64,000 nucleotides of DNA. Origin: Macrostomum lignano. Its lineage: Eukaryota. Positions 9,288 through 44,870 of this stretch are shown piece by piece (position 1 is the first letter of the stretch; each line of letters opens with the position of its first letter). The notes under the pieces are model-generated. The model saw only the letters and a list, made by a program, of their open reading frames with translations. It was not told where the DNA came from and made no database searches. The stretch lies in the NCBI GenBank assembly GCA_002269645.1, contig NIVC01000412.1, positions 124,001 to 188,000 on the forward strand. The letters are read 5' to 3'. The translations under genes and the position numbers were made by a program.

Positions 9288-10454
9288 CTATTCGCCTCGC
9301 AGCTTAGCCTTCTTAAGCTTCTTCTTGCTCTCCTTCTTCTTCGCCGTGGTCTCCTCGGTGTCCGCGGCCCGGGCTACCACCTGTTCGTGCTCGTTTAGAA
9401 TCACTTCAACGTGGCACGGCGAAGACATGTAGGGCCCGATGCGGCCGTGGGCGCGGTACGTGCGCCGGCGCATCTTAGGGGCGCGGTTCACCTGAGACCG
9501 AGGTGGAAAGGGCGCGCTTTTTTACCTTAATAATAGAGAACTTTCTTCTGCTCCCCTACCAAGAAACTGCCTCTTGTGCTCTACCCTCAGCTGTTGAGAA
9601 TCTGCCTCTCTTCTGCTCTCACTTAGCTGTTGAGAATCTGCCTCTCTTCTGCTCTCACTTAGCTGTTGAGAATCTGCCTCTCTGCTCTCACTTAGCTGTT
9701 GAGAATCTGCCTCTCTTCTGCTCTCACTTAGCTGTTGAGAATCTGCCTCTCTTCTGCTCTCACTTAGCTGTTGAGAATCTGCCTCTCTTCTGCTCTCACT
9801 TAGCTGTTGAGAATCTGCCTCTCTTCTGCTCTCACTTAGCTGTTGAGAATCTGCCTCTCTGCTCTCACTTAGCTGTTGAGAATCTGCCTCTCTTCTGCTC
9901 TCACTTAGCTGTTGAGAATCTACCTCTCTTCTGCTCTCACTTAGCTGTTGAGAATCTGCCTCTCTTCTGCTCTCACTTAGCTGTTGAGAATCTGCCTCTC
10001 TTCTGCTCTCACTTAGCTGTTGAGAATCTGCCTCTCTGCTCTCACTTAGCTGTTGAGAATCTGCCTCTCTACTCTCTGCAGACATTTAAGCCAGCCACAC
10101 CTGGATGTGATCGATAACCAGGTGATCAGCGTCCAATCCCTTGAACTCAGCGTTGCTCTCGCAGTTCTTGAGCAACTGCAGCAGAAATTCGCAGGACTTC
10201 TTCGGCCAGCGGCCAGTGGCTGTGCCCCACACCTTAGACTGGGCATGCCGGCCAGTGCCGCCCATAAAGCGCCTGAACGGCACAATTTCCTTCTTGGCGA
10301 TGACATTCTTCAGGTAGCGCTGCGCCCGTTTTAGTGGCATGCCGCGCACCGCGCCAGCAGCCTCGCGCGTATTCTTGAAATGCACGCGCAGATAGGAGCC
10401 GCGTGCTTTGGCGCACTTTGAAGCGCTCTCTGGCTTGACACTGTAGCGACCCAT
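9288..10454 (-). CDS. RPL17: 60S ribosomal protein L17 (uL22), 2 exons, ~185 aa
   Basis: MGRYS...[10 protein letters not shown]...GRWPKKS...VIDHIQ|[29 protein letters not shown]. Exons 10454-10101 and 9491-9288. Confidence 0.97.
9580..10075. repeat. 36-bp minisatellite (33-bp variant) in RPL17 intron
   Basis: Unit AGCTGTTGAGAATCTGCCTCTCTTCTGCTCTCACTT. Confidence 0.95.
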
Positions 10455-11449
10455 AGATTCTGAGTAATCAGCTTTCTTTGCTGCTTTTGGCTCTCTTTCT
10501 CTGCTTCGGTCCCGGTTAAGCCACCCGGCTGATGCTCTGCAGAGCAATTTGAATGATAGCTTTGACAGAGGCTAAAATTCCCTAATCAATTAACATCGCT
10601 ACTGGATGAAAGAAAATGTCAACTCTGTACTAAAGATATAGTCTTTGGATATCAGAATTGCAGAGCTGAGTGGAATTCTCAGCTCTGCAATTTTAGATTA
10701 GCAAACTATAAACTAGCCTACAAAACAATGAGGACTAAGAGACTGCCAGATACTATATTAATATGACAAGCTATAACCTATAGATATGCCTTATAAAGGT
10801 AAGCCTATTTGTAGGCTGCCTACTTTATTTACTACTTAGTCTTAGTAAAGACAGGTTTAAATTTAACTATCAACATTATTATTTCCTCTAGTTTTAGGTT
10901 TATCAAAGCTACTTAGCTAGCCTTACCTTCTAATATAGAGGCTTACCTTCTATATTAGCCTTCTATATTATTATATTAGCTAGCCTTACCTTCTAATATA
11001 CCTTCTAATATAAAGGGTCAAGATTCCAATTTTTGCTATAATCCTAAAATTTTAGGATTAGTATCTTTATTTTATACATGGGAAGTATTCAATCTTTTGT
11101 TTTATATATATAGATTGAAATTTAAACTAAAATTAGAATATGAATACTACTTTTGCATAAATAGTACTAGACCTTTATATTTAATTTTAATTATCATATT
11201 GAGTTTTTTTCATCTTAGTATATAATAAGCTAAAAGCTAAGAGCAAAAAAGAAGCTAATAGAGCCTAGTATATTAGAAGGTAAAACTGATGCATATGACT
11301 CTTGCAAGTATTATCTCTAAGGTTTTGGCTAATCTGGTTAAATAAGATTTTTTATCAATAAATAAGGGATTAAAAGGCTTAAAATGATTTATTTGGCATA
11401 AAAACTGGTTATGTTAAATAAAAATGATCACAATATTAAAAAGCAATAT

Positions 11450-12515
11450 ACAAGAAGCACTAAAAAAGTTCTGAGCCAAGCCTGACCAAGATCTCATTGT
11501 TACAAAGCGTGAAAATCAAAGCTCTAACACAATAATATGATATAGTCTTTGACAAAATTTTCAGCTCTCTAGACATTACTTAAGTTCCATAGCACCTTAA
11601 TATTTTTAGCTAATCTATCTATCTATCTATCTATCTATCTATAGCAAATTCTCAAGGACTAAAACTTAAGTATAGGGCAGTGATCAAATTCTTGACCTTG
11701 CAAGGCTCAAAACCTGCTGAAATCCAAAGTTGCATGGCTGGCATATATACTAGGGCTGCCCCCATATATGCCACTGTCAAGTGTTAGGCAGCCAAGTTCA
11801 AATTTGGCCAAGACTCTTGGAGATAACCCTCAATGCAAATGCCCCCAGGCTGCTGTCACTGCTGAAAAAAATCTAGCACATTGAGGCCTTGGTTGATGGT
11901 TTGCATAGTGATTGGCAGGTAAAGGTCAGGGAACTTGCGGCAAACACTGGGCTTTTTGACCCATAGGTCATCGAGATCCTACACTAGCATTTTCATTTGT
12001 CAAAGGTTTCAGCCTAATGGATCCTGCAAATCTTGACAAGCAACTAAAAGTCTATATGGTTATAATATGCAAAGCTTGTCCTACAAACTTATAGTCTAGA
12101 TTATGCCAAATTTTTATTCTACTATGACTAGTAATGAGACATAGATCTACCACCATAATCACAAATCAAGAAGAATCAAAGTAGTGACTGCCAGTTGGTG
12201 CACCTGCATCACTGAAGGCACATATTAGATATAGTGCAGTCAAGATAATGCTCAGTCTTTTGGGATGCCAAAGGCCCACTACTACTAGACTTTTTTCTAT
12301 ATAAACAGATAGTCATAGGTGCCTACTATGCTAATCTGTTCACCTATCTGTACAAGACAATCAAGGATAATTAGTAGGCAAAGGCAGCTATCAGCATTGC
12401 AGGGTTCTAAGAGCTGCCATACCTTGCTTATTCATTTGACCTTGACCTGAGCAACTTTTACCTATTTTTGCATCTCAAGCAAGGGGCAAGCATACTTTAA
12501 AATCCCACTATAAGT
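11450..12515 (+). pseudogene. Degenerate mariner-type (Tc1/mariner) transposon relic
   Basis: Translated fragments YRAVIKFLT, YATVKC*AAKFK, VSA*WI, MTSNET*IYH (for V/ITGDETWIYH), FWDAKGPLLLDF, GAYYANL; many stops and frameshifts; ends approximate. Confidence 0.85.
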
Positions 12516-12554
12516 ATAAAAAAATGACAACTAGGCCTAGGCCTAATAGTCTTT

Positions 12555-12670
12555 ATGGCTATCCTGTAGTTTTGCACGTTAAATTATTTTACGGAATTAT
12601 TTCGCCCTCTATTCAAGGGTGGTGGGGGGTGGGGGTTATAATTAAACGTGCGAAACTACAGGATAGCCAT
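12555..12670. mobile_element. 116-bp MITE-like hairpin element
   Basis: Terminal inverted repeat ATGGCTATCCTGTAGTTT(T/C)GCACGTT.AATTAT at both ends. Confidence 0.7.
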
Positions 12671-14159
12671 CTTTACAACTTTGTAAATAGTCATTATAAA
12701 GTTTCTTTTTTATTTTGACTTTTGAAATCAACAAGAACTCAATTTTCACTCTTCACTAAATTTTAAGGTGCATTTGCCAAAATGGTCAGCTTTAAAAGTT
12801 TAAACAAAATGGTTATTGCAAAAGTATTTTTGCTATTATTGACTTTCACCAAAAATTCCTTCATCAAAGCAGGTTGAAATTATGCAAATAGGATATTAGG
12901 GGCTAAAGTTAGAATAAATTCTTTTATTTTCAATTCAAAGGAGCTTTTGAGTCTGACTCTCTAGACTAAACTTAGGGATCTTGAAAGATTATTAGAGATT
13001 TTTGATATTAGGCCTACATGCAACAAAAGAGAAAGGAAAAAAGTGAAAGAAAAGGAAAAATAAAAGAAAAAAAAGAAAAGACAAAAAAAAGATAGAAAAG
13101 AAGACTAAAGACAACTGGACAAGGAACAAAGCAGGCATGAGCCTAGGGAAAGATGATTCAAATTTAAAATTTTTACTGATATAGACATTAAAGTCAAAGA
13201 AAAGCAAGTTTAGATATGCCTACTAGTATATGAATATGCCAAATATTGAAAACATAGGCAGAAAAGCCTACTAGGCCTAAAAAATAAAAATATAGATTAG
13301 GCCTATAGTATAAGCCTATGTCTATATTTTATAGACATAGGCTTATAGGCCCCTAGTACTAATTAAATGAAGAAGTATTTAGTCTTAATAGGCCTTAGTA
13401 GGCCTATGGTCATAGTTACTCTTGTTCTACCATTTATCCATAACTAGGCCTATATTATTAACTTTTGCTTCAGGTTTTCTTTCATACATGGGCTAGGCTA
13501 GTGCATAGCCTAGGGGGCCTAGCGCCCTAGGCCTACCAGGCGCCTGCCACCTAGCCTAGGTAAATTGCATTTTTGGTCAAAAAGTAAGTTTCAATTCATG
13601 GCTAGTGTAAATCAGGACCCAGGGGAGTTGCACATGTATGAGTGTATGACTAGTGCTATAGATATATTCTGCATTGCTTGGGGAAAGCAAGAGGTTCTAA
13701 TTAGGGATGTCAATTCCCTAGAAATTTTTTTCACCAAAAAAATCGCTCCCTGGCCCTGGGCCTGGGGTCCTCCGGTCCTGGGGATTTTTTAGCTAAAACC
13801 CTGGGGTCCCACTACCAATATAAAATGTGTATACAAAACATGTTCAACAATCGTGATTTTAATTAATCTGTCTGAGAATCCGTCACTCTTAGGGTACATT
13901 TGAGAAGCTTAAAATAGCTTCTTGGACTTATAGTGAGGTAGGCCTAAACCTGATTTTTAATTGTCTTAATTTTATTAACAACGATTATCTTAACCTTTCA
14001 AATAGTTATACTAAAACAAAGAGTAGCTAGGCCTATACATGCTGCTTTTAAATTGCTCAAATGGTATACTACTTTAACATATGTATTTTCTTTGAGTAAA
14101 AAGTATTGTTAAATGAATAAAGAAGATTTAACAACATTTTTTCATTATCAAGATAGCTT

Positions 14160-14579
14160 GGGTGCATTCGAGTAGCTTAAATGGCTTAAAATAACTGTGA
14201 CGAGTTTATTTAGTTCGAGAACATGGGACTGATGCGCGTGCTGAGTCTGAGTGTTGATCTTGACCTAGGTAGGCCAATATACGTATTATTAATTTAACAA
14301 CTCAATTGCTAGTCTGAATAATGGCGAGTAGGTCAGAAGCAGTATGGCAATGCCAACTATTTACCAAAGGTAATCTGAGACGATAATATAATGCTAATGC
14401 CACCAAGCCTACGGGTACTAAGACCAACACACAGAGCGCAGGACACCATAAATACGAAATTGAACATTTTCAATACAGAAGCGACGACGTTACATAACTT
14501 AAAATTACTTAAAATGATTTTAAGCAGCGGCGCCATTTTAAGCCAATTTAAGCCATTTTAAGCCACTCGAACGCACCCC
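14160..14579. mobile_element. ~420-bp MITE (Harbinger-like termini)
   Basis: Left end GGGTGCATTCGAGTAGCTTAAATGGCTTAAA matches the reverse complement of the right end GGGTGCGTTCGAGTGGCTTAAAATGGCTTAAA. Superfamily is inferred. Confidence 0.7.
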
Positions 14580-17049
14580 TTATTTTAAACTTAATGGGCC
14601 TAATTGTAAAAATATTTTTAAACTGATTGCATGTGAAGAATATTTTGAATATCACCACATTTATCAAATCATTATCATCATCTCCATGGGGGCGCAGAGA
14701 CAAATCCATCTCCAATGGAAGCGGTGGAAGCAAAATACAAATGCAGAAAAAAAGTTTTTTGCCCTCCAGGGCTCCAATTTTTTAAAAATCATCATCTAAC
14801 ATCTAAATTTGCATTTAGAAATTTCTGAAATAGGCCTATGGAAAATCAAAATCAAAATTAAAATTTTATAAAACCTTTAGGGCCTTTTTGGCTATAGTCT
14901 AATCAGGGTTCTCTTTTTTGCCAAAACAAAGTACAAAATGCACTCTATGTTCAATTTCAAAGTGCAATTTCTCTTTTTTAAATTAAAACAATACAAATAA
15001 AGCTTCATTAGAAAAATAGGTTATGAGACTGCACTTAAACTGCATCCATTTTTTAATTTTGAGGTAGGGGCCTACAATTTTAAAATTTAGGATAGGCCTA
15101 CATAGGCCGCCCATGCACATTCTGTGCACGAAAATAAACCCTAAGTGTTAAGTCTAGTTAAACAATATTTTGAATTTTAGTAAAGTAGGCCTAGACCTTG
15201 GCTTATACTTAGCATTTAGCAGAATATTAAAGTTGCTACTCCAAAACCAATGGTCAACTTTCCTTAGATCTGAGCTGTGACTTTGTCCAAGTGATGCAAC
15301 AATTCACACTATATTTGTAGGCTTATATGGGTTGATTTTGTAATTAAGCTAATATGAAGAAAAATAAACTAATATTAGGCCTAATGACAATGTATTGTCA
15401 ATGATAATATTAAAAATTGATTAATTCATCAGTTGACCACTAGACTAGCCTAGCTTTGAGATAGAAACTTTAACATGTTTCTAAGTATATATTAGGCCTA
15501 ATTATTAAAAAACTATCTTGGAAGGCTTGATAATTAAAGATAGTTTGGTTAAAAAGGCAAAGGCCTAAAGTAAAAATGAATTTTAGCTAATTTAATTAGC
15601 TTTTAATGTAATAGGCCTAGAAAAGCTCTTAACCTAAGTCATTTTATAGTCATAAGCAACAAAAAATTCAATGTTTTAGGTCATAAGCTTAATACATATA
15701 GTAGTACATAGTATAAGTAGAGATAAAAGACTAATAATTAAGATAAATACAGAAGTCATTTAAGCCTCTAAAGCTAAAGCTTAATACCATGACTTAGCAA
15801 TAGAAATTTTTAATATAACATGCATATTATGATTGGGGTAACTTGGTAAGGCTAAAGATAAGATGATTCTTGCTAATGAGTAGGCCCTAATAAGTAGGCC
15901 TAAAACTATTGTTATCATTTTACTTTATTATAATTTATATCATGGTAAATAAGAAAAAAATGTTTCTATTATATTTAACTTTAAATTAAATTCATTAGAT
16001 TCATTGGATTTATTATAAGAAGCTACAAAATAAGTAGCTGTAGATAAACATATAGATATAAAAGAATCATATAAGAAATTGATGTTTATTGGTATAGATA
16101 TAGAAGAATTTTGGTTGTAATAGGACTAATAGTCTTTAGTAAGGACAAAATTAAAAGCATATTAATTGTTTTTATATATATGTGCACAATCCCCTTGATT
16201 TATACTAGCCATGAAATTTGTCTAGGAAAGAAACCCTCAATGCAAAAATAGACCAATTTTAGATAAATTGCAAGAATAACTGTGACTGTCTTATTATAGC
16301 TAAGTGCCTTATAATCTAACTAGTAATATGTCTATTCTTTTGAATAGGCATTTTTGTGATTTATCCCTAGTCTACCACAATTTATAGTGGCCTTATCAGC
16401 CAAGTTAGCAGCAGTTTCATATGTTTGTTTTAATATATATGTTATGAGGCCTTCAAGTCTAATCTACCTATTAAAGGGCCTATTTATTTAAATGCATATT
16501 TAACCATAGGCAGACAAATAGTATTTTTTCACTCTGTCTATATTTGAGCTAGATGGCATAAAATATATCTTTATTATATGAGCTAGATTTATTATCTCTT
16601 ACTATAGCTATTCCTAATAACTAGAAGCCAAGATCTCAGATAGAAAGTCTATTAGAGAATAGATTATTATATATAACTATATATATGTATATAATATAGA
16701 ACTTCTCTTTTATCGATGTATACTATATAACTCATTAATAAGGCTAGGATATTTTGTCATAATGAAAAATGAAGTACATATAAAGTAAATGGTTTATAAT
16801 CAATTTATAGCCACTATGCAACATATGCTAAGAGATTGTTCTAAATGAAAAATTCCTATGGTTGCTAAATAGTACAAATGTATATTTTTATTGAATTTAA
16901 TGAAGAAAAAGAATGGAGTTATTATGTGTATGAAATAAGTTGGACAATAATAGTATGATACTATGTTAGTCTGCAATGCAACAAAAGTAATGAAATATAT
17001 AAACTAATAAACTAGGTAGGGATAGTTACATATACACATTAGAAATGTC

Positions 17050-18330
17050 CAATATACAAGCAATTGTTTTAAGTATAATTGGCACTAAAGCATGCACCAA
17101 GGCACAGAGCTAGCCTCCTTAGACATATGATGCAAACAAAGATCAGGTCAGAGCTCCTTCCTTGGATGCCTTAGTGGGCAAATGTTGAGAAGCAGCAGGC
17201 GGCCCATCACCTGTGCCAGTTGGCACTGCTGCTGCAGCTGGAGGATTAGTTCAGCATCAGGCAATAACAGTTTCTGCAACTAGAATATCTAGCACCTTGC
17301 ACAAGAAATGCAGAAAAGACATGCTGCTGCCATGGTAGTTGTACAAGATCAAGGTGCTGTGGACTGTATAGCTTGGTACAGCTTGATACTCAACTTGCTT
17401 TTCTTGGAGGGAATGTACTGTCTAAACAGTACCCATCCTTTGTACATGACCAGAGTCTTGTCAATTGATAGTTACTGATCTGGTATGTAATTGTTCCAAC
17501 AGGCATGCTGCACAAGAGCAAGGAATGGAATGATTTTGTCCACAGGGCTTTGAGGAGTGGGACCAGTGCTACTGTAGAAGCAGGAGAGAATCTGCTTTAA
17601 AACAGTTACACAAAATTGAATGCGGTTGAGCCAAAAATGTGCAGTGGTACACAGGATCCTTTGCCTAGTACAAGCTGATCTCTGGCTAGTCATCAATGCC
17701 AATCAGCTTTTTCATCTCGTCAACACTGTAATCCTTCCATGTAGACACAAACTTTGGTACCTCATCAACTGACCTTTCCTTAGCAAAACTCCAAGCCCAT
17801 TCGGTCGTCCAACTGGCAATGTTTTCAAATAGCTCGTCGGTTAGGTGCAAAAAGGCTGACTCACTGCCATTCGCTGATTTGTGGTGGTACCAGCCCATGA
17901 ACTCTCGGGCAGCCGTGGCTTGTCGTGTCCATCCCTTTGATAGCTTGGTGCCACACGTGCTCTTCCTCCTTTTCGATGTCCTCATCTGAGCTGCTTGCGC
18001 TTTCGACGTTGTCACCATCCTACTCACTGGGCCTTTTATAACAATATAAATGATCCATCCTCGTTGTCAGTGAGCAAATTGTTTTCAGAGTCCGATGTTT
18101 AGATCCATAACTAGTCGTCGCTGTCAGAAGTAAGATGCTCGTATAAAGCAATCAGTAGAAATAAAGTATATTAGCATTAGCAAACAGACACTAAATTTAA
18201 GTGAGACTATACGGAGGGTGGTGGTAGCAGCAGCATTCATGATCGTAGCTTCGGAAACTATTTTGGACCTATCTGTCGGGAATGGTTATATAAGTGTAAG
18301 TGTCTAAACTGCAGTCAAATAGAGGTTAAA
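17050..18330 (-). pseudogene. piggyBac-family transposase relic with internal deletion
   Basis: Acidic N-terminus; LTDELFENIASWT..TWKDYSVDEMKKLIGI; LSIDKTLVMYKGWVLFRQYIPSKKSKLSIKLY (for SIDE.MV.FKGR..FRQYIPSK...GIK). TTAA-CCTC-type end near 18326. Confidence 0.85.
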
Positions 18331-18526: not shown

Positions 18527-18682
18527 CCAAGCATGCTTATATTAATTAATTAGACATTAATCAGACAATCTGTCTTAATGACGAACACGTCTTATTTACA
18601 ACTTATTGATTGCAGATCCTAGTGCAACTCAATCCTGATTCAATCTGTAACTAAGTTGGCAGCAGAAACAAGTTATTAAACA

Positions 18683-20002
18683 ATGCAGGTCAATCCGCAC
18701 ATGCCTGGCATGATGCCAATGGCCCCAGTTAGCAGTATGCAGCAGAGCATGCCAATGGTGCAGCAGCAGCCTATGACGCATCCGGGCCAGATGCCAATGA
18801 TGGCTTATGGCCAGCAGCCGCCGCAGCAGCAGCAGCAGCCGTTTATGGCCTACCCGCAGCCGGGGCCGCCCATGCCTGGCGTGATGCCGCCGCCTCCGCC
18901 GCCCCAGATGCAAATGCAAGGCCCAGGCCCTATGGATATGCAGTTCATGATGCAGCAACAGCAGCAGCCTCCGCAAATGCTGCATCATCAGCATGGACCC
19001 CAGAATCATCGCCAGCATCACGGAGGCGGCGGCGGCGGCGGCGGAGGTGGAAGCGGCCAGAATCCCAAGGGTCGCGTGTTCATTGGCAATCTGAACACGA
19101 ACGAGCTGGGCCGAGCCGATCTGGAGCGAATATTCAGCAAATACGGCAGCCTGACGGAAGTCAACGTCCATAACGGCTTCGCTTTCGTGCAGTTTGTCGA
19201 AGAGCCGGCAGCTCGGTCCGCTTGCAAACGCGAGGACGGCCGCGTCTACGCCGGCCAGACCATCGACGTGAACATCGCGTCTGAGCCCAAGAATCGGCGA
19301 GACCGACACGGCGGCGGCAGCGGCTCGTCGGCGTCGAGCGTTGTCAGCGGCGGCGGCGGTGGCGGTAGCAGCGGCCTCAGTGTGAAGGAGCGTCTGGGAC
19401 CCCGACGGCTCGGCAGTCAGGACGACAGCGGCGGTTTCGACTCCGGCAAGCTGTCTCAAGTTGGCGCCTCGCGCGATAGAATCAGCGGCGGCCGGGACTA
19501 CTTGGTCTGCGGCAACTGCAAGGACGTTTTCGACAACCTGGACCGGCTCAGTTCGCACAAGCAGGACGGCTGCCGACGCCGGTTTGTCTGCCTGTGCAAG
19601 CTGAAGGGTGAACCCAGGATGCTGGACTGCGCCAAGTGCGGCAAGCAGTTTCTCAGCAGCTGGGAGCTGCTGCGCCACTGCCAGGCTGAGCATGAGATTG
19701 GCGTGTACACCAACTGCGTCTTCGCTGCCGGCATTGGCGGCGGCGAGACCGCGGCCTCCGCCGCCGCTGCCTCATCTGTCGGCGGCAGTGCCAACACCAG
19801 CGGCGAAATCGCGGCGGCCACGGTTGAAGGCAGCGGCGGCGACGGCCCTGTTGGTGCTGCCGCCGGCGCTGAACTGTCCTCAGCCGCGGCCTCGGAGACT
19901 GAGCCTGAGCCCGCTGGCGGCAGTCGGCGCCGCGGCGAGATGGAAGACGATGAAGCCACTGACGAAGATGAGGACGATGATGATAGCGATAAGAATGACT
20001 GA
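18683..20002 (+). CDS. Intronless protein, 439 aa: Q/P/M-rich N-terminus, hnRNP-C/RALY-type RRM, BCL11-type CCHC and C2H2 zinc fingers, acidic tail
   Basis: RVFIGNLNT..IFSKYG..VHNGFAFVQF..EDGRVYAGQTIDVNIASEPK (hnRNP C RRM); LVCGNCKDVF..LSSHKQDGC; CAKCGKQFLSSWELLRHCQAEHEIGVY. Confidence 0.88.
   Translation: MQVNPHMPGMMPMAPVSSMQQSMPMVQQQPMTHPGQMPMMAYGQQPPQQQQQPFMAYPQPGPPMPGVMPPPPPPQMQMQGPGPMDMQFMMQQQQQPPQMLHHQHGPQNHRQHHGGGGGGGGGGSGQNPKGRVFIGNLNTNELGRADLERIFSKYGSLTEVNVHNGFAFVQFVEEPAARSACKREDGRVYAGQTIDVNIASEPKNRRDRHGGGSGSSASSVVSGGGGGGSSGLSVKERLGPRRLGSQDDSGGFDSGKLSQVGASRDRISGGRDYLVCGNCKDVFDNLDRLSSHKQDGCRRRFVCLCKLKGEPRMLDCAKCGKQFLSSWELLRHCQAEHEIGVYTNCVFAAGIGGGETAASAAAASSVGGSANTSGEIAAATVEGSGGDGPVGAAAGAELSSAAASETEPEPAGGSRRRGEMEDDEATDEDEDDDDSDKND

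Positions 20003-21526: not shown

Positions 21527-44870
<23,344 letters not shown>

What the first reader, a model, noticed from the sequence alone, without database searches (positions are those of the whole stretch)
10600..17700. RIP-like hypermutated block: CpG and CpA/TpG converted to TpA in an animal genome
Seen: by hand count only 3 CpG in 10601-12554, none in 12671-13520 and 1 in 15130-17100, whereas similarly AT-rich DNA elsewhere (4.1-5.0 kb, 54.1-55.7 kb) keeps CpG. CTAG and TA are abundant, and TAGGCCTA occurs about 17 times in 12.5-15.9 kb, with GG/CC preserved. In the mariner relic, departures from conserved motifs are explained by C>T/G>A at CpG or CpA/TpG if ancestral codons are inferred from the motifs: TGDETW reads ACT AGT AAT GAG ACA TAG (12127-12144, three TG>TA); VSARW has TAA (12015, CGA>TAA); KRWAAE reads AAG TGT TAG GCA GCC AAG; QTVTG reads CAG ATA GTC ATA GGT (two ACA>ATA). 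Established: ordinary 5mCpG decay stops at TpG/CpA; CpA>TpA is the hallmark of fungal RIP; AID/APOBEC enzymes select on 5' context, not on a 3' A/G. Inference: a repeat-targeted, CpR-specific mutational or genome-defence process (RIP-like, or heavy CpA methylation followed by deamination) operates in this lineage.
Basis: partly seen in the sequence, partly recalled or inferred. Interest (0 to 1): 0.9.

Follow-up and report, generated by a model that had tools for sequence, protein, structure and literature searches.

The report
Decayed transposon graveyard, not RIP
This 7-kb stretch between two genes of the flatworm Macrostomum lignano is an old heap of dead transposons whose CpG sites are still decaying in the way methylated DNA does. 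The repeated word TAGGCCTA comes from 6-base insertions at TA sites, so it is not evidence of a fungal-style repeat-killing (RIP) mutation system.

Summary
The window is Macrostomum lignano, and the block is the spacer between RPL17 and an RRM gene.

RIP is not supported:
- The RIP indices fail; the composite index is negative everywhere.
- Long tandem arrays and three 98-99% identical homeologous copies are not hypermutated.
- 40 of 55 ancestral CpGs stopped at TpG/CpA, and only 8 became TpA.
- A piggyBac relic straddles the right boundary and shows pure CpG>TpG/CpA decay inside it.
- In a young MITE, all three differences between copies are CpG transitions, so the decay is continuing.

Against intact copies of the same mariner family, 146 of 202 changes in the relic are C>T. 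The rates per site run CpG .52 > CpA .33 > CpT .22 > CpC .13, and CAG/CAC exceed CAA. This is a gradient, not CpR specificity.

TAGGCCTA is not a survivor of mutation. Two clean TA versus TA-GGCC-TA indels between homeologs show that it is inserted at TA sites, probably as a transposon excision footprint. No donor element was found.

Best reading: a germline-methylated domain undergoing 5mC decay plus AT-biased drift, possibly with some non-CpG methylation.

The parts
10600..17700 (.). CpG-void, AT-rich intergenic block between RPL17 (9288-10529, minus strand) and the RRM/zinc-finger gene (18683-20002, plus strand)
   Evidence: CpG o/e 0.11-0.13, GC 31%. Gene calls. Dense CpG stops at 10526 (a last single one at 10597) and resumes at 17718/17802.
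11449..12480 (+). Dead mariner copy. It is 3'-truncated, has an internal deletion and multiple stop codons, and its 5' end is TA|CAAGAAGCACTAAAAAAGTTCTGAGCC.
   Evidence: 73% DNA identity to intact family members L004-L009, including the M. lignano copy L005/PAA84702.1. 146 of 202 differences from the consensus are C>T.
12532..15902 (.). Cluster of 17 exact TAGGCCTA (TA + GGCC + TA) with unrelated flanks. Longer variants also occur, such as TAGGCCCCTA, TAGGGGCCTA and TAGGCCCTA.
15493..15500 (.). Polymorphic TAGGCCTA. It is present in the window and in L003; L002 has a plain TA at this site.
   Evidence: Three-way alignment
16016..17017 (.). The start of this interval, 16016-16017, is the empty TA site at which homeolog L002 alone carries TA-GGCC-TA. 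The rest of the interval is the most AT-rich part of the block (GC 25-28%) and has no motif.
12557..12668 (.). Young hAT-like MITE: 33-nt terminal inverted repeats, 8-bp target-site duplication GTCTTTAC at 12549-12556 and 12669-12676. It is absent from L002. All three differences between the window and L003 copies are CpG>TpG/CpA, derived in the window.
14178..14582 (.). CpG-bearing MITE with GGGTGCATTCGAG... inverted repeats and a 3-bp target-site duplication. It carries a 303-bp internal segment found only in the window. A decayed copy of the same inverted repeat lies at 13892-13920.
17200..18050 (-). piggyBac-type transposase relic that straddles the 17.7-kb boundary. Below 17700 it has no CpG and is rich in TG/CA; above 17700 CpG is retained.
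   Evidence: Pfam PF13843, 34.2 bits against a cut-off of 22.4. Frames. Composition.

Best explanation
The block is the 7-kb spacer between two divergently transcribed genes of the flatworm Macrostomum lignano. It is filled with old, dead DNA transposons: a mariner, a piggyBac and MITE remnants.

Inferred: the block lies in a domain that is cytosine-methylated in the germ line and is bounded by the two CpG-retaining promoter regions.

Shown:
- CpGs are lost by transition to TpG/CpA, and this is still happening.
- Over a much longer time, cytosines in every context drift to thymine under a strong, continuing AT-biased pressure. The rates rank CpG >> CpA (mainly CAG/CAC) > CpT > CpC. This raises TpA and lowers GC towards about 25-30%.
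- The 17 TAGGCCTA words have a separate origin. Each is a TA site that gained GGCC plus a second TA.

Inferred: the CpA > CpT > CpC ranking reflects some DNMT3-type non-CpG methylation on top of ordinary deamination. The TAGGCCTA words are most likely the excision footprint of a TA-targeting cut-and-paste element with G-rich termini.

Nothing senses repeats.

CpG decay:
- 40 of 55 ancestral CpGs in the relic are now CA or TG, 8 are TA and 2 remain CG.
- 17101-17700 has CpG o/e .06, with TG+CA at 116 against 74 expected and TA at 31 against 44.
- The same piggyBac relic keeps CpG (o/e .75) just across the boundary.
- Ongoing CpG-specific hypermutability: the young MITE has 8 CpGs in L003 and 5 in the window, and these are the only three differences (OR 113, p=7e-6).

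Continuing process rather than a burst:
- Changes inside the relic since the homeolog split, polarised by the family consensus, are at least 10 C>T against at most 2 T>C (p=.002).
- In the AT-rich remainder of the block, CA>TA (5) and TA>CA (4) are balanced.

Gradient:
- CpG .52, CpA .33, CpT .215, CpC .13. The changes are spread evenly over codon positions and over both strands, with no 5' neighbour effect.
- CAG .45 and CAC .39 against CAA .09.

No repeat targeting:
- In consensus-polarised tandem arrays, C>T is only 29% of the changes, and CpA .29 compares with CpC .21 and CpT .16.
- The RIP indices are negative.

Methylation machinery:
- DNMT1 and DNMT3 are retained and 5mC is present at low levels in M. 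lignano (PMC11292947, PMC9246332).

TAGGCCTA:
- Two clean 6-bp TAGGCC indels lie at TA sites between the homeologs.
- The flanks of the 17 sites are unrelated.
- 17 observed against 0.26-0.88 expected.

Generality:
- A second CpG-void AT-rich block, with a TAGGCCTA close to it, lies on another contig (L005).
Against: - No methylation data were examined. Methylation of this block is inferred only from its mutational signature and from published reports of DNMT genes.
- The context gradient rests on a single 1-kb relic.
- The Harbinger-like MITE (14178-14582) has about 6 CpGs that are identical in all three copies, which is fewer changes than the rate in the young MITE predicts (not significant).
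- No donor element with TA-flanked GG...CC ends was found in about 100 kb of M. lignano sequence. The local mariner ends in CGAG.
- The two polymorphic TAGGCC events cannot be polarised without an outgroup.
- 17 near-identical footprints in 3.4 kb is unusually dense for excision scars.
Confidence: 0.6

Rival explanations
1. RIP-like genome defence: a machinery detects duplicated DNA and converts C to T at CpG/CpA in the repeats, as in Neurospora.
For: - 72% of relic changes are C>T, with CpA above CpC/CpT.
- Intact family members keep the C/G alleles.
- TpA/ApT is 0.97-1.17 in the block against 0.76 in the rest of the window.
Against: - (CpA+TpG)/(ApC+GpT) is 1.67 in the relic, equal to the intact copies, and the composite RIP index is negative everywhere.
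- Preference for CpA is only 1.5-2.5-fold over CpT/CpC.
- Only 8 of 55 CpGs reached TpA.
- Tandem arrays at 87-98% identity and up to 1.6 kb long, three homeologs at 98-99% identity over more than 10 kb, and the young MITEs are not hypermutated.
- The mutation continues in what is now a unique, diverged sequence.
- The boundary cuts through a single piggyBac relic.
- TAGGCCTA is an insertion, not a survivor of mutation.
Confidence: 0.06
2. Plain regional AT-biased drift with no contribution from non-CpG methylation. CpG is lost by 5mC deamination, and every other C>T reflects ordinary spontaneous deamination or repair bias that happens to rank CpA > CpT > CpC.
For: - The same mild ranking is seen in tandem arrays outside the block: CpA .29, CpC .21, CpT .16.
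- There is no strand asymmetry and no 5' context effect.
- In the piggyBac portion, CpG is gone with no gain in TpA, which suggests that non-CpG change is simply slow.
Against: - The CAG/CAC against CAA contrast (37/87 against 2/22, p=.003) matches the known flank preference of DNMT3 enzymes (from general knowledge, not tested here).
- C>T outnumbers C transversions about 5:1 at non-CpG sites in the relic, against about 1:1 in the arrays.
Confidence: 0.22
3. Editing by an AID/APOBEC-like cytidine deaminase acting on transposon DNA.
For: The relic's spectrum is dominated by C>T.
Against: - There is no 5' neighbour preference: ApC .25, CpC .25, GpC .21, TpC .28.
- Both strands are hit equally (70/270 C>T, 83/239 G>A).
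- The changes are spread along the whole element.
- The effect is regional and cuts across elements.
Confidence: 0.03
4. For the TAGGCCTA cluster only: the words are not transposon scars. They are either a functional homotypic cluster of a palindromic binding site in a bidirectional intergenic region, or the product of an unknown templated micro-insertion process.
For: - The motif is strikingly uniform: 17 exact copies against 10 one-mismatch variants.
- It is confined to 3.4 kb between two promoters.
- No donor element was found.
Against: - Gain or loss is by a clean 6-bp indel at TA, with TA duplicated. That is the geometry of a Tc1/mariner-type target duplication plus terminal nucleotides; Minos is known to leave TA plus 4 nt (from general knowledge).
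- Variants with extra G or C exist.
- A copy occurs at an unrelated locus (L005:730).
Confidence: 0.3

Closest known systems
CpG decay by 5-methylcytosine deamination in germline-methylated DNA (as in vertebrate genomes and in methylated compartments of invertebrates with mosaic methylation)
   Same: - CpG is almost absent, with reciprocal TpG/CpA products.
- Boundaries at CpG-retaining promoter regions are sharp.
- Young insertions still carry CpG and are losing it about 100-fold faster than other sites change.
- DNMT1 and DNMT3 are reported in the species.
   Different: - The affected compartment here is intergenic transposon debris, not gene bodies, which are the usual target in invertebrates.
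- Non-CpG C>T is also unusually strong and ranks CpA > CpT > CpC.
- Methylation itself was not measured.
Fungal repeat-induced point mutation (RIP; Neurospora RID/DIM-2)
   Same: Dead transposon copies are riddled with C:G>T:A transitions and stop codons. TpA/ApT is raised. CpA is hit more than CpC/CpT. The result is an AT-rich block next to GC-normal genes.
   Different: - There is no link to duplication.
- Dinucleotide preference is weak.
- CpA/TpG are not depleted and the RIP indices are negative.
- Most CpGs stop at TpG/CpA.
- The process is gradual and continuing, and it is bounded by a chromosomal domain rather than by a repeat.
Methylation-linked C>T decay of plant transposons methylated at CG, CHG and CHH, and DNMT3 non-CpG methylation (mCAC/mCAG) in vertebrates
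   Same: The ranking CG > CA(G/C) > CT > CC of C>T rates mirrors the known context preferences of de novo methyltransferases.
   Different: Non-CpG methylation has not been shown in this flatworm. The evidence here is a single 1-kb relic.
Tc1/mariner-superfamily excision footprints (for example Minos: TA + 4 terminal nucleotides; Sleeping Beauty: TAC(A/T)GTA)
   Same: A TA target site is duplicated around a few extra nucleotides. The net insertion is 6 bp, as for Minos. Presence and absence are polymorphic between otherwise identical sequences.
   Different: - No donor element with GG...CC or GGCC termini was identified.
- The scars are unusually uniform and dense: 17 in 3.4 kb.
- The resident mariner family has CGAG termini and cannot be the source.

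Membership tests
Fungal-type RIP | Depletion of the target dinucleotide: (CpA+TpG)/(ApC+GpT) below about 1.03 and composite RIP index above 0 | tested here: not met
   The ratio is 1.26-1.73 in all sub-blocks and 1.67 in the relic, against 1.64-1.68 in intact copies. The composite index runs from -0.09 to -0.92.
Fungal-type RIP | Product enrichment: TpA/ApT above about 0.89 | tested here: met
   0.97 in the relic and 1.05-1.17 in the AT-rich sub-blocks, against 0.76 in the rest of the window. 17101-17700 has only 0.82.
Fungal-type RIP | Mutation is triggered by, and confined to, duplicated sequence | tested here: not met
   - Tandem arrays show C>T as 29% of changes and no hypermutation.
- Homeologs at 98-99% identity differ by 0.3-0.8% with Ts:Tv of 33:23.
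- The boundary cuts through one piggyBac relic.
Fungal-type RIP | Almost exclusively C:G>T:A, with a strong preference for one dinucleotide | tested here: inconclusive
   72% of relic changes are C>T, but CpA is only 1.5x CpT and 2.5x CpC.
Fungal-type RIP | RID/Masc1-type methyltransferase homologue acting premeiotically | not testable with these tools
   No proteome or genome-wide search of M. lignano was available.
5mC-deamination CpG decay in a methylated domain | CpG loss with reciprocal TpG/CpA gain | tested here: met
   40 of 55 ancestral CpGs became CA or TG. In 17101-17700, TG+CA is 116 against 74 expected and CpG is 2 against 31 expected.
5mC-deamination CpG decay in a methylated domain | Present-day CpG-specific hypermutability of CpGs newly arrived in the domain | tested here: met
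   The young MITE lost 3 of its 8 CpGs on the window's branch, and these are the only differences (OR 113, p=7e-6).
5mC-deamination CpG decay in a methylated domain | Maintenance and de novo DNA methyltransferases present in the species | not tested
   Taken from the literature only: DNMT1 and DNMT3 are conserved and 5mC levels are low (PMC11292947, PMC9246332, PMC10658182).
5mC-deamination CpG decay in a methylated domain | Cytosines of the domain are actually methylated in the germ line | not testable with these tools
   No methylome data were available. The 2022 review states that methylation patterns in free-living flatworms are unknown.
AID/APOBEC-type editing | 5' neighbour motif and strand-coordinated clusters | tested here: not met
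   ApC .25, CpC .25, GpC .21, TpC .28. C>T is 70/270 and G>A is 83/239.
Non-CpG (DNMT3-type) methylation signature | C>T ranking CpA > CpT > CpC with CAG/CAC preferred | tested here: met
   Rates are .33.215 and .13. CAG is .45, CAC .39, CAT .27 and CAA .09 (p=.0075). This rests on one relic only.
Tc1/mariner-type excision footprint | TA target duplicated around a few residual nucleotides, with a matching empty TA site | tested here: met
   Two independent events at window 15493 and 16016.
Tc1/mariner-type excision footprint | Residual nucleotides equal the termini of an identifiable element | tested here: inconclusive
   No TA-flanked GG...CC element was found in the window, L002, L003 or L005. 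The resident mariner ends in CGAG...CTCG. The whole genome could not be searched.

The most novel reading that the evidence does not exclude
A chromosomal-domain-based genome defence that does not sense repeats operates in a flatworm. Under this reading, DNMT1/DNMT3 methylate transposon-filled intergenic domains at CpG and at CAG/CAC, and deamination then irreversibly kills the elements. The outcome resembles RIP but arises by a different logic. In the same domains, a very active TA-targeting element leaves uniform GGCC scars.
Probability: 0.2. Interest if true: 0.6.

Novelty: new member of a known kind. Interest (0 to 1): 0.38.

Why it matters
Published reviews say that methylation patterns in free-living flatworms are unknown (PMC9246332). 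This locus gives a concrete, testable prediction: M. lignano methylates transposon-filled intergenic domains, and perhaps CAG/CAC as well as CpG, while sparing promoters. It also predicts that the marks are mutagenic enough to erase CpG and inactivate elements.

The case also shows why RIP-like composition should not be read from sequence alone. The most eye-catching clue, TAGGCCTA, turned out to be an insertion scar. If those scars are excision footprints, their density points to a highly mobile TA-targeting element in a model organism for which transposon-based transgenesis tools are of practical interest.

Tried and rejected
- The conceptual translation of the piggyBac relic found no close relative, so that relic could not be polarised. 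Only composition on either side of the boundary was used.
- Wasik et al. 2015, the primary source on methylation in this species, is not held.
- A full-text search for TAGGCCTA returned only primers and unrelated oligonucleotides. A search for Macrostomum Tc1 elements gave nothing usable.
- Donor search. All TAGG...CCTA pairs with matching inverted repeats were screened in the window, L002 and L005. The only strong hit, L005:179-633, lies inside the long inverted repeat of a MITE with a 9-bp target duplication, so it is not a TA element.
- The idea that TAGCTA, TAGGCTA and TAGCCTA form a graded series of footprints was dropped. Under a first-order Markov model they are not enriched: 8 against 6.3 and 5 against 2.5.
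- Removing the footprints hardly changes the dinucleotide profile. The high GpC o/e (about 1.7) is shared by other AT-rich DNA in the window, so it is not specific to the block.
- The intact M. lignano mariner copy L005 was tried as a control for the neutral spectrum. It shows C>T equal to T>C, but it is an intact ORF at compositional equilibrium, so it says nothing about mutation bias.
- An apparent contrast between the 'historic' Ts:Tv of 5 and the 'recent' 1.4 first suggested a burst. Polarising recent changes inside the relic showed the same C>T bias continuing, so the burst idea was dropped.

Full report
**What the window is.** The 439-aa ORF at 18683-20002 is found exactly on two contigs of GCA_002269645.1. 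Its cluster mate is annotated BOX15_Mlig006178g1 of Macrostomum lignano. The window equals NIVC01000412.1 (L001 = window 8683-30002). Two further copies of the locus exist: L002 on NIVC01003561.1 and L003 on NIVC01000129.1. They are collinear with the window at 97-99.5% identity. The block at 10.6-17.7 kb is the spacer between an RPL17 gene (Ribosomal_L22; window 9288-10529, minus strand) and the RRM/zinc-finger gene (plus strand). The two genes are therefore transcribed divergently.

**Observation.**
The AT-rich comparator segments keep their CpG.
- TAGGCCTA occurs 17 times, all in 12532-15902, against 0.88 expected.
- Over the block, CG o/e is .13, TA 1.04, CA/TG .98, AC/GT .73, CC/GG 1.33 and GC 1.73. 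GGCC is 9x expectation and CTAG 2.7x.
- GpC is equally enriched in other AT-rich DNA of the window, so that feature is not specific to the block.
- Two segments inside the block, 12556-12669 and 14197-14493, have CpG at expectation. They are young insertions, absent from one or two of the homeologs.

**TAGGCCTA is an insertion, not a survivor.**
- The 17 sites share nothing beyond the 8-mer.
- In the three-way alignment, two of the roughly 25 indels are exactly TAGGCC at a TA site.
  - At window 15493, the window and L003 read TATAT-TAGGCC-TAATT where L002 reads TATAT-TAATT.
  - At window 16016, only L002 reads TTATTA-TAGGCC-TAAGAAG.
- So the motif is TA + GGCC + TA, a duplicated TA around four extra bases. 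This is the geometry of a Tc1/mariner-superfamily target duplication plus terminal nucleotides left on excision. From general knowledge, Minos leaves TA plus 4 nt.
- Longer variants occur: TAGGCCCCTA, TAGGGGCCTA, TAGGGGGCCTA and TAGGCCCTA.
- The ratio of 17 exact to 10 one-mismatch copies suggests that the motifs are younger than the surrounding debris.
- I found no donor element. The resident mariner family ends in CGAG...CTCG. Screens for TA-GG...CC-TA elements in about 100 kb of M. lignano DNA were negative. The footprint reading is therefore an inference. That the motif arises by insertion is shown.

- The conceptual translation of the relic found an intact 356-aa transposase. Its 90% cluster contains M. 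lignano PAA84702.1. The DNA of six copies was fetched.
- The relic (window 11449-12480) aligns at 73% identity to these copies, which have GC 51-55% and CpG o/e .65-.77.
- Against the consensus of at least 3 of 4 intact copies there are 202 differences: C>T 146, T>C 16 and transversions 40.
- C>T per ancestral C by 3' base is CpG 53/102 (.52), CpA 48/144 (.33), CpT 28/130 (.215) and CpC 17/128 (.13). CpA against CpC+CpT gives OR 2.4, p=5e-4.
- The changes are spread evenly over codon positions (.315/.274/.308), so they lie on the relic's lineage.
- They are symmetric between strands (70/270 C>T, 83/239 G>A) and show no 5' neighbour effect.
- The +2 base matters: CAG .45, CAC .39, CAT .27 and CAA .09 (p=.0075).

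**Why it is not RIP.**
1. *Fate of the 55 ancestral CpGs.* 27 became CA, 13 TG, 8 TA and 2 remain CG. Most stop where ordinary 5mC decay stops.
2. *RIP indices.* (CpA+TpG)/(ApC+GpT) is 1.67 in the relic, the same as in intact copies (1.64-1.68). The composite RIP index is negative in every sub-block.
3. *Repeats are not targeted.*
   - The window is packed with tandem arrays. Polarised against their consensus, C>T is 72 of 251 variants, with CpA .29, CpC .21, CpT .16 and CpG .44 per site.
   - The three homeologs differ by only 0.3-0.8% in the block, with Ts:Tv of 33:23.
4. *The process is continuing, not a burst.*
   - Inside the relic, changes since the homeolog split, polarised by the family consensus, are at least 10 C>T against at most 2 T>C, plus 5 transversions (p=.002).
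   - In the already AT-rich remainder of the block, CA>TA (5) and TA>CA (4) are balanced. That is what a sequence near compositional equilibrium should show.
5. *The effect is regional.*
   - A piggyBac-type relic (PF13843, 34 bits) runs on the minus strand across the 17.7-kb boundary.
   - At 17101-17700 it has CpG o/e .06, TG+CA o/e 1.56 and TA o/e .71. This is pure CpG>TpG/CpA decay with no TpA gain.
   - At 17701-18100 it keeps CpG (o/e .75).
   - A process that senses repeats would not stop in the middle of an element. A methylation domain ending at a promoter would.
6. *CpG-specific hypermutability is visible now.* The hAT-like MITE at 12557-12668 (8-bp target duplication GTCTTTAC, absent from L002) has 8 CpGs in L003 and 5 in the window. 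Those three CpG>TpG/CpA changes are the only differences between the two copies (OR 113, p=7e-6).

**Mechanism.**
- Shown: CpG is lost by transition, and the loss is ongoing.
- Shown: C>T-biased decay continues, with the ranking CpG >> CpA > CpT > CpC.
- Shown: the domain boundaries lie at the two promoters.
- Shown: TAGGCCTA arises by a 6-bp insertion at TA.
- Inferred: the block is methylated in the germ line. M. lignano retains DNMT1 and DNMT3 and has low-level 5mC (PMC11292947, PMC9246332, PMC10658182).
- Inferred: the CAG/CAC preference reflects some non-CpG methylation by a DNMT3-type enzyme.
- Inferred: the GGCC scars come from a TA-targeting cut-and-paste element.
- A second CpG-void AT-rich block (L005:1001-3000, CpG o/e .02), with a TAGGCCTA close to it at L005:730, lies beside the intact mariner on another contig. 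This kind of compartment is therefore recurrent in the genome.

**Comparison and verdict.** The block works like a methylated, CpG-decaying compartment of a genome with mosaic methylation. Two things are added: unusually strong AT-biased decay of dead transposons, and a separate overlay of insertion scars. It resembles RIP only in outcome, and it fails the two defining tests of RIP, duplication dependence and CpA depletion. It is a new instance of known kinds of process in a species whose methylation landscape has not been described. Interest is moderate. The most novel reading that is still open is domain-wide methylation at both CpG and CAG/CAC acting as an irreversible transposon-killing defence. 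I rate that at about 0.2.

**Limits.**
- The context analysis rests on one relic of about 1 kb.
- The recent-change counts are small.
- The primary methylation paper for the species (Wasik et al. 2015) is not held, and no methylome data could be examined.
- The whole M. lignano genome could not be searched.
- The two polymorphic TAGGCC events cannot be polarised.

Noticed in passing
window 17200-18050, minus strand: piggyBac-type transposase relic (Pfam PF13843) upstream of the RRM gene. One half retains CpG and the other has none, which makes it a natural marker of a domain boundary. No close relative turned up in the protein search.
   Followed up: partly
window 12549-12676: 112-bp hAT-like MITE with 33-nt inverted repeats and an 8-bp target duplication GTCTTTAC. 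It is present in the window and L003 and absent from L002, so it inserted after the first homeolog split.
   Followed up: yes
window 14178-14582 and 13892-13920: MITE with GGGTGCATTCGAG... inverted repeats and a 3-bp target duplication (Harbinger-like). The window copy carries an extra 303-bp internal segment missing from L002 and L003. A decayed copy of the same inverted repeat lies 260 bp upstream.
   Followed up: partly
L002:1039-2820 (opposite window 10975-11048): A CpG-bearing insertion of about 1.7 kb found only in homeolog L002. It contains internal 69-bp tandem repeats and a (CAGA)n tract.
   Followed up: no
L004, L006-L009 (metagenome and SRA-derived contigs): Intact copies of the same mariner family, 93-98% identical to one another, occur on short contigs from JGI, ENA and Logan samples. 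They are only 84% identical to the M. lignano copy L005. Either Macrostomum-like DNA is present in those samples or the family has moved horizontally. The termini are TA|CGAG...CTCG|TA, the same four terminal bases as Minos.
   Followed up: partly
whole window, e.g. 21840-23462, 27471-29013, 31463-32724, 38976-39454: Extreme density of minisatellite and microsatellite arrays (81 TRF rows). Many are GC-rich and retain CpG and CpA, in contrast to the block.
   Followed up: partly
L005:152-650: MITE of about 480 bp with very long (about 80 nt) inverted repeats GGCAGTGCTTATCCCCACGG... and a 9-bp target duplication ATATTAATA (Mutator- or Merlin-like). It sits in an AT-rich block beside the intact mariner.
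   Followed up: no
window 18629-19693, minus strand, against 18683-20002, plus strand: A 354-aa antisense ORF overlaps the RRM gene. It is probably an artefact of the low-complexity Q/P/G-rich coding sequence.
   Followed up: no
tandem arrays across the window: In consensus-polarised array variants, C preceded by G mutates to T about 3-fold less often (3/38) than C after A, C or T (62/253). This would help explain the genome-wide GpC excess, but the relic does not show the effect (.21 against .25-.28).
   Followed up: partly
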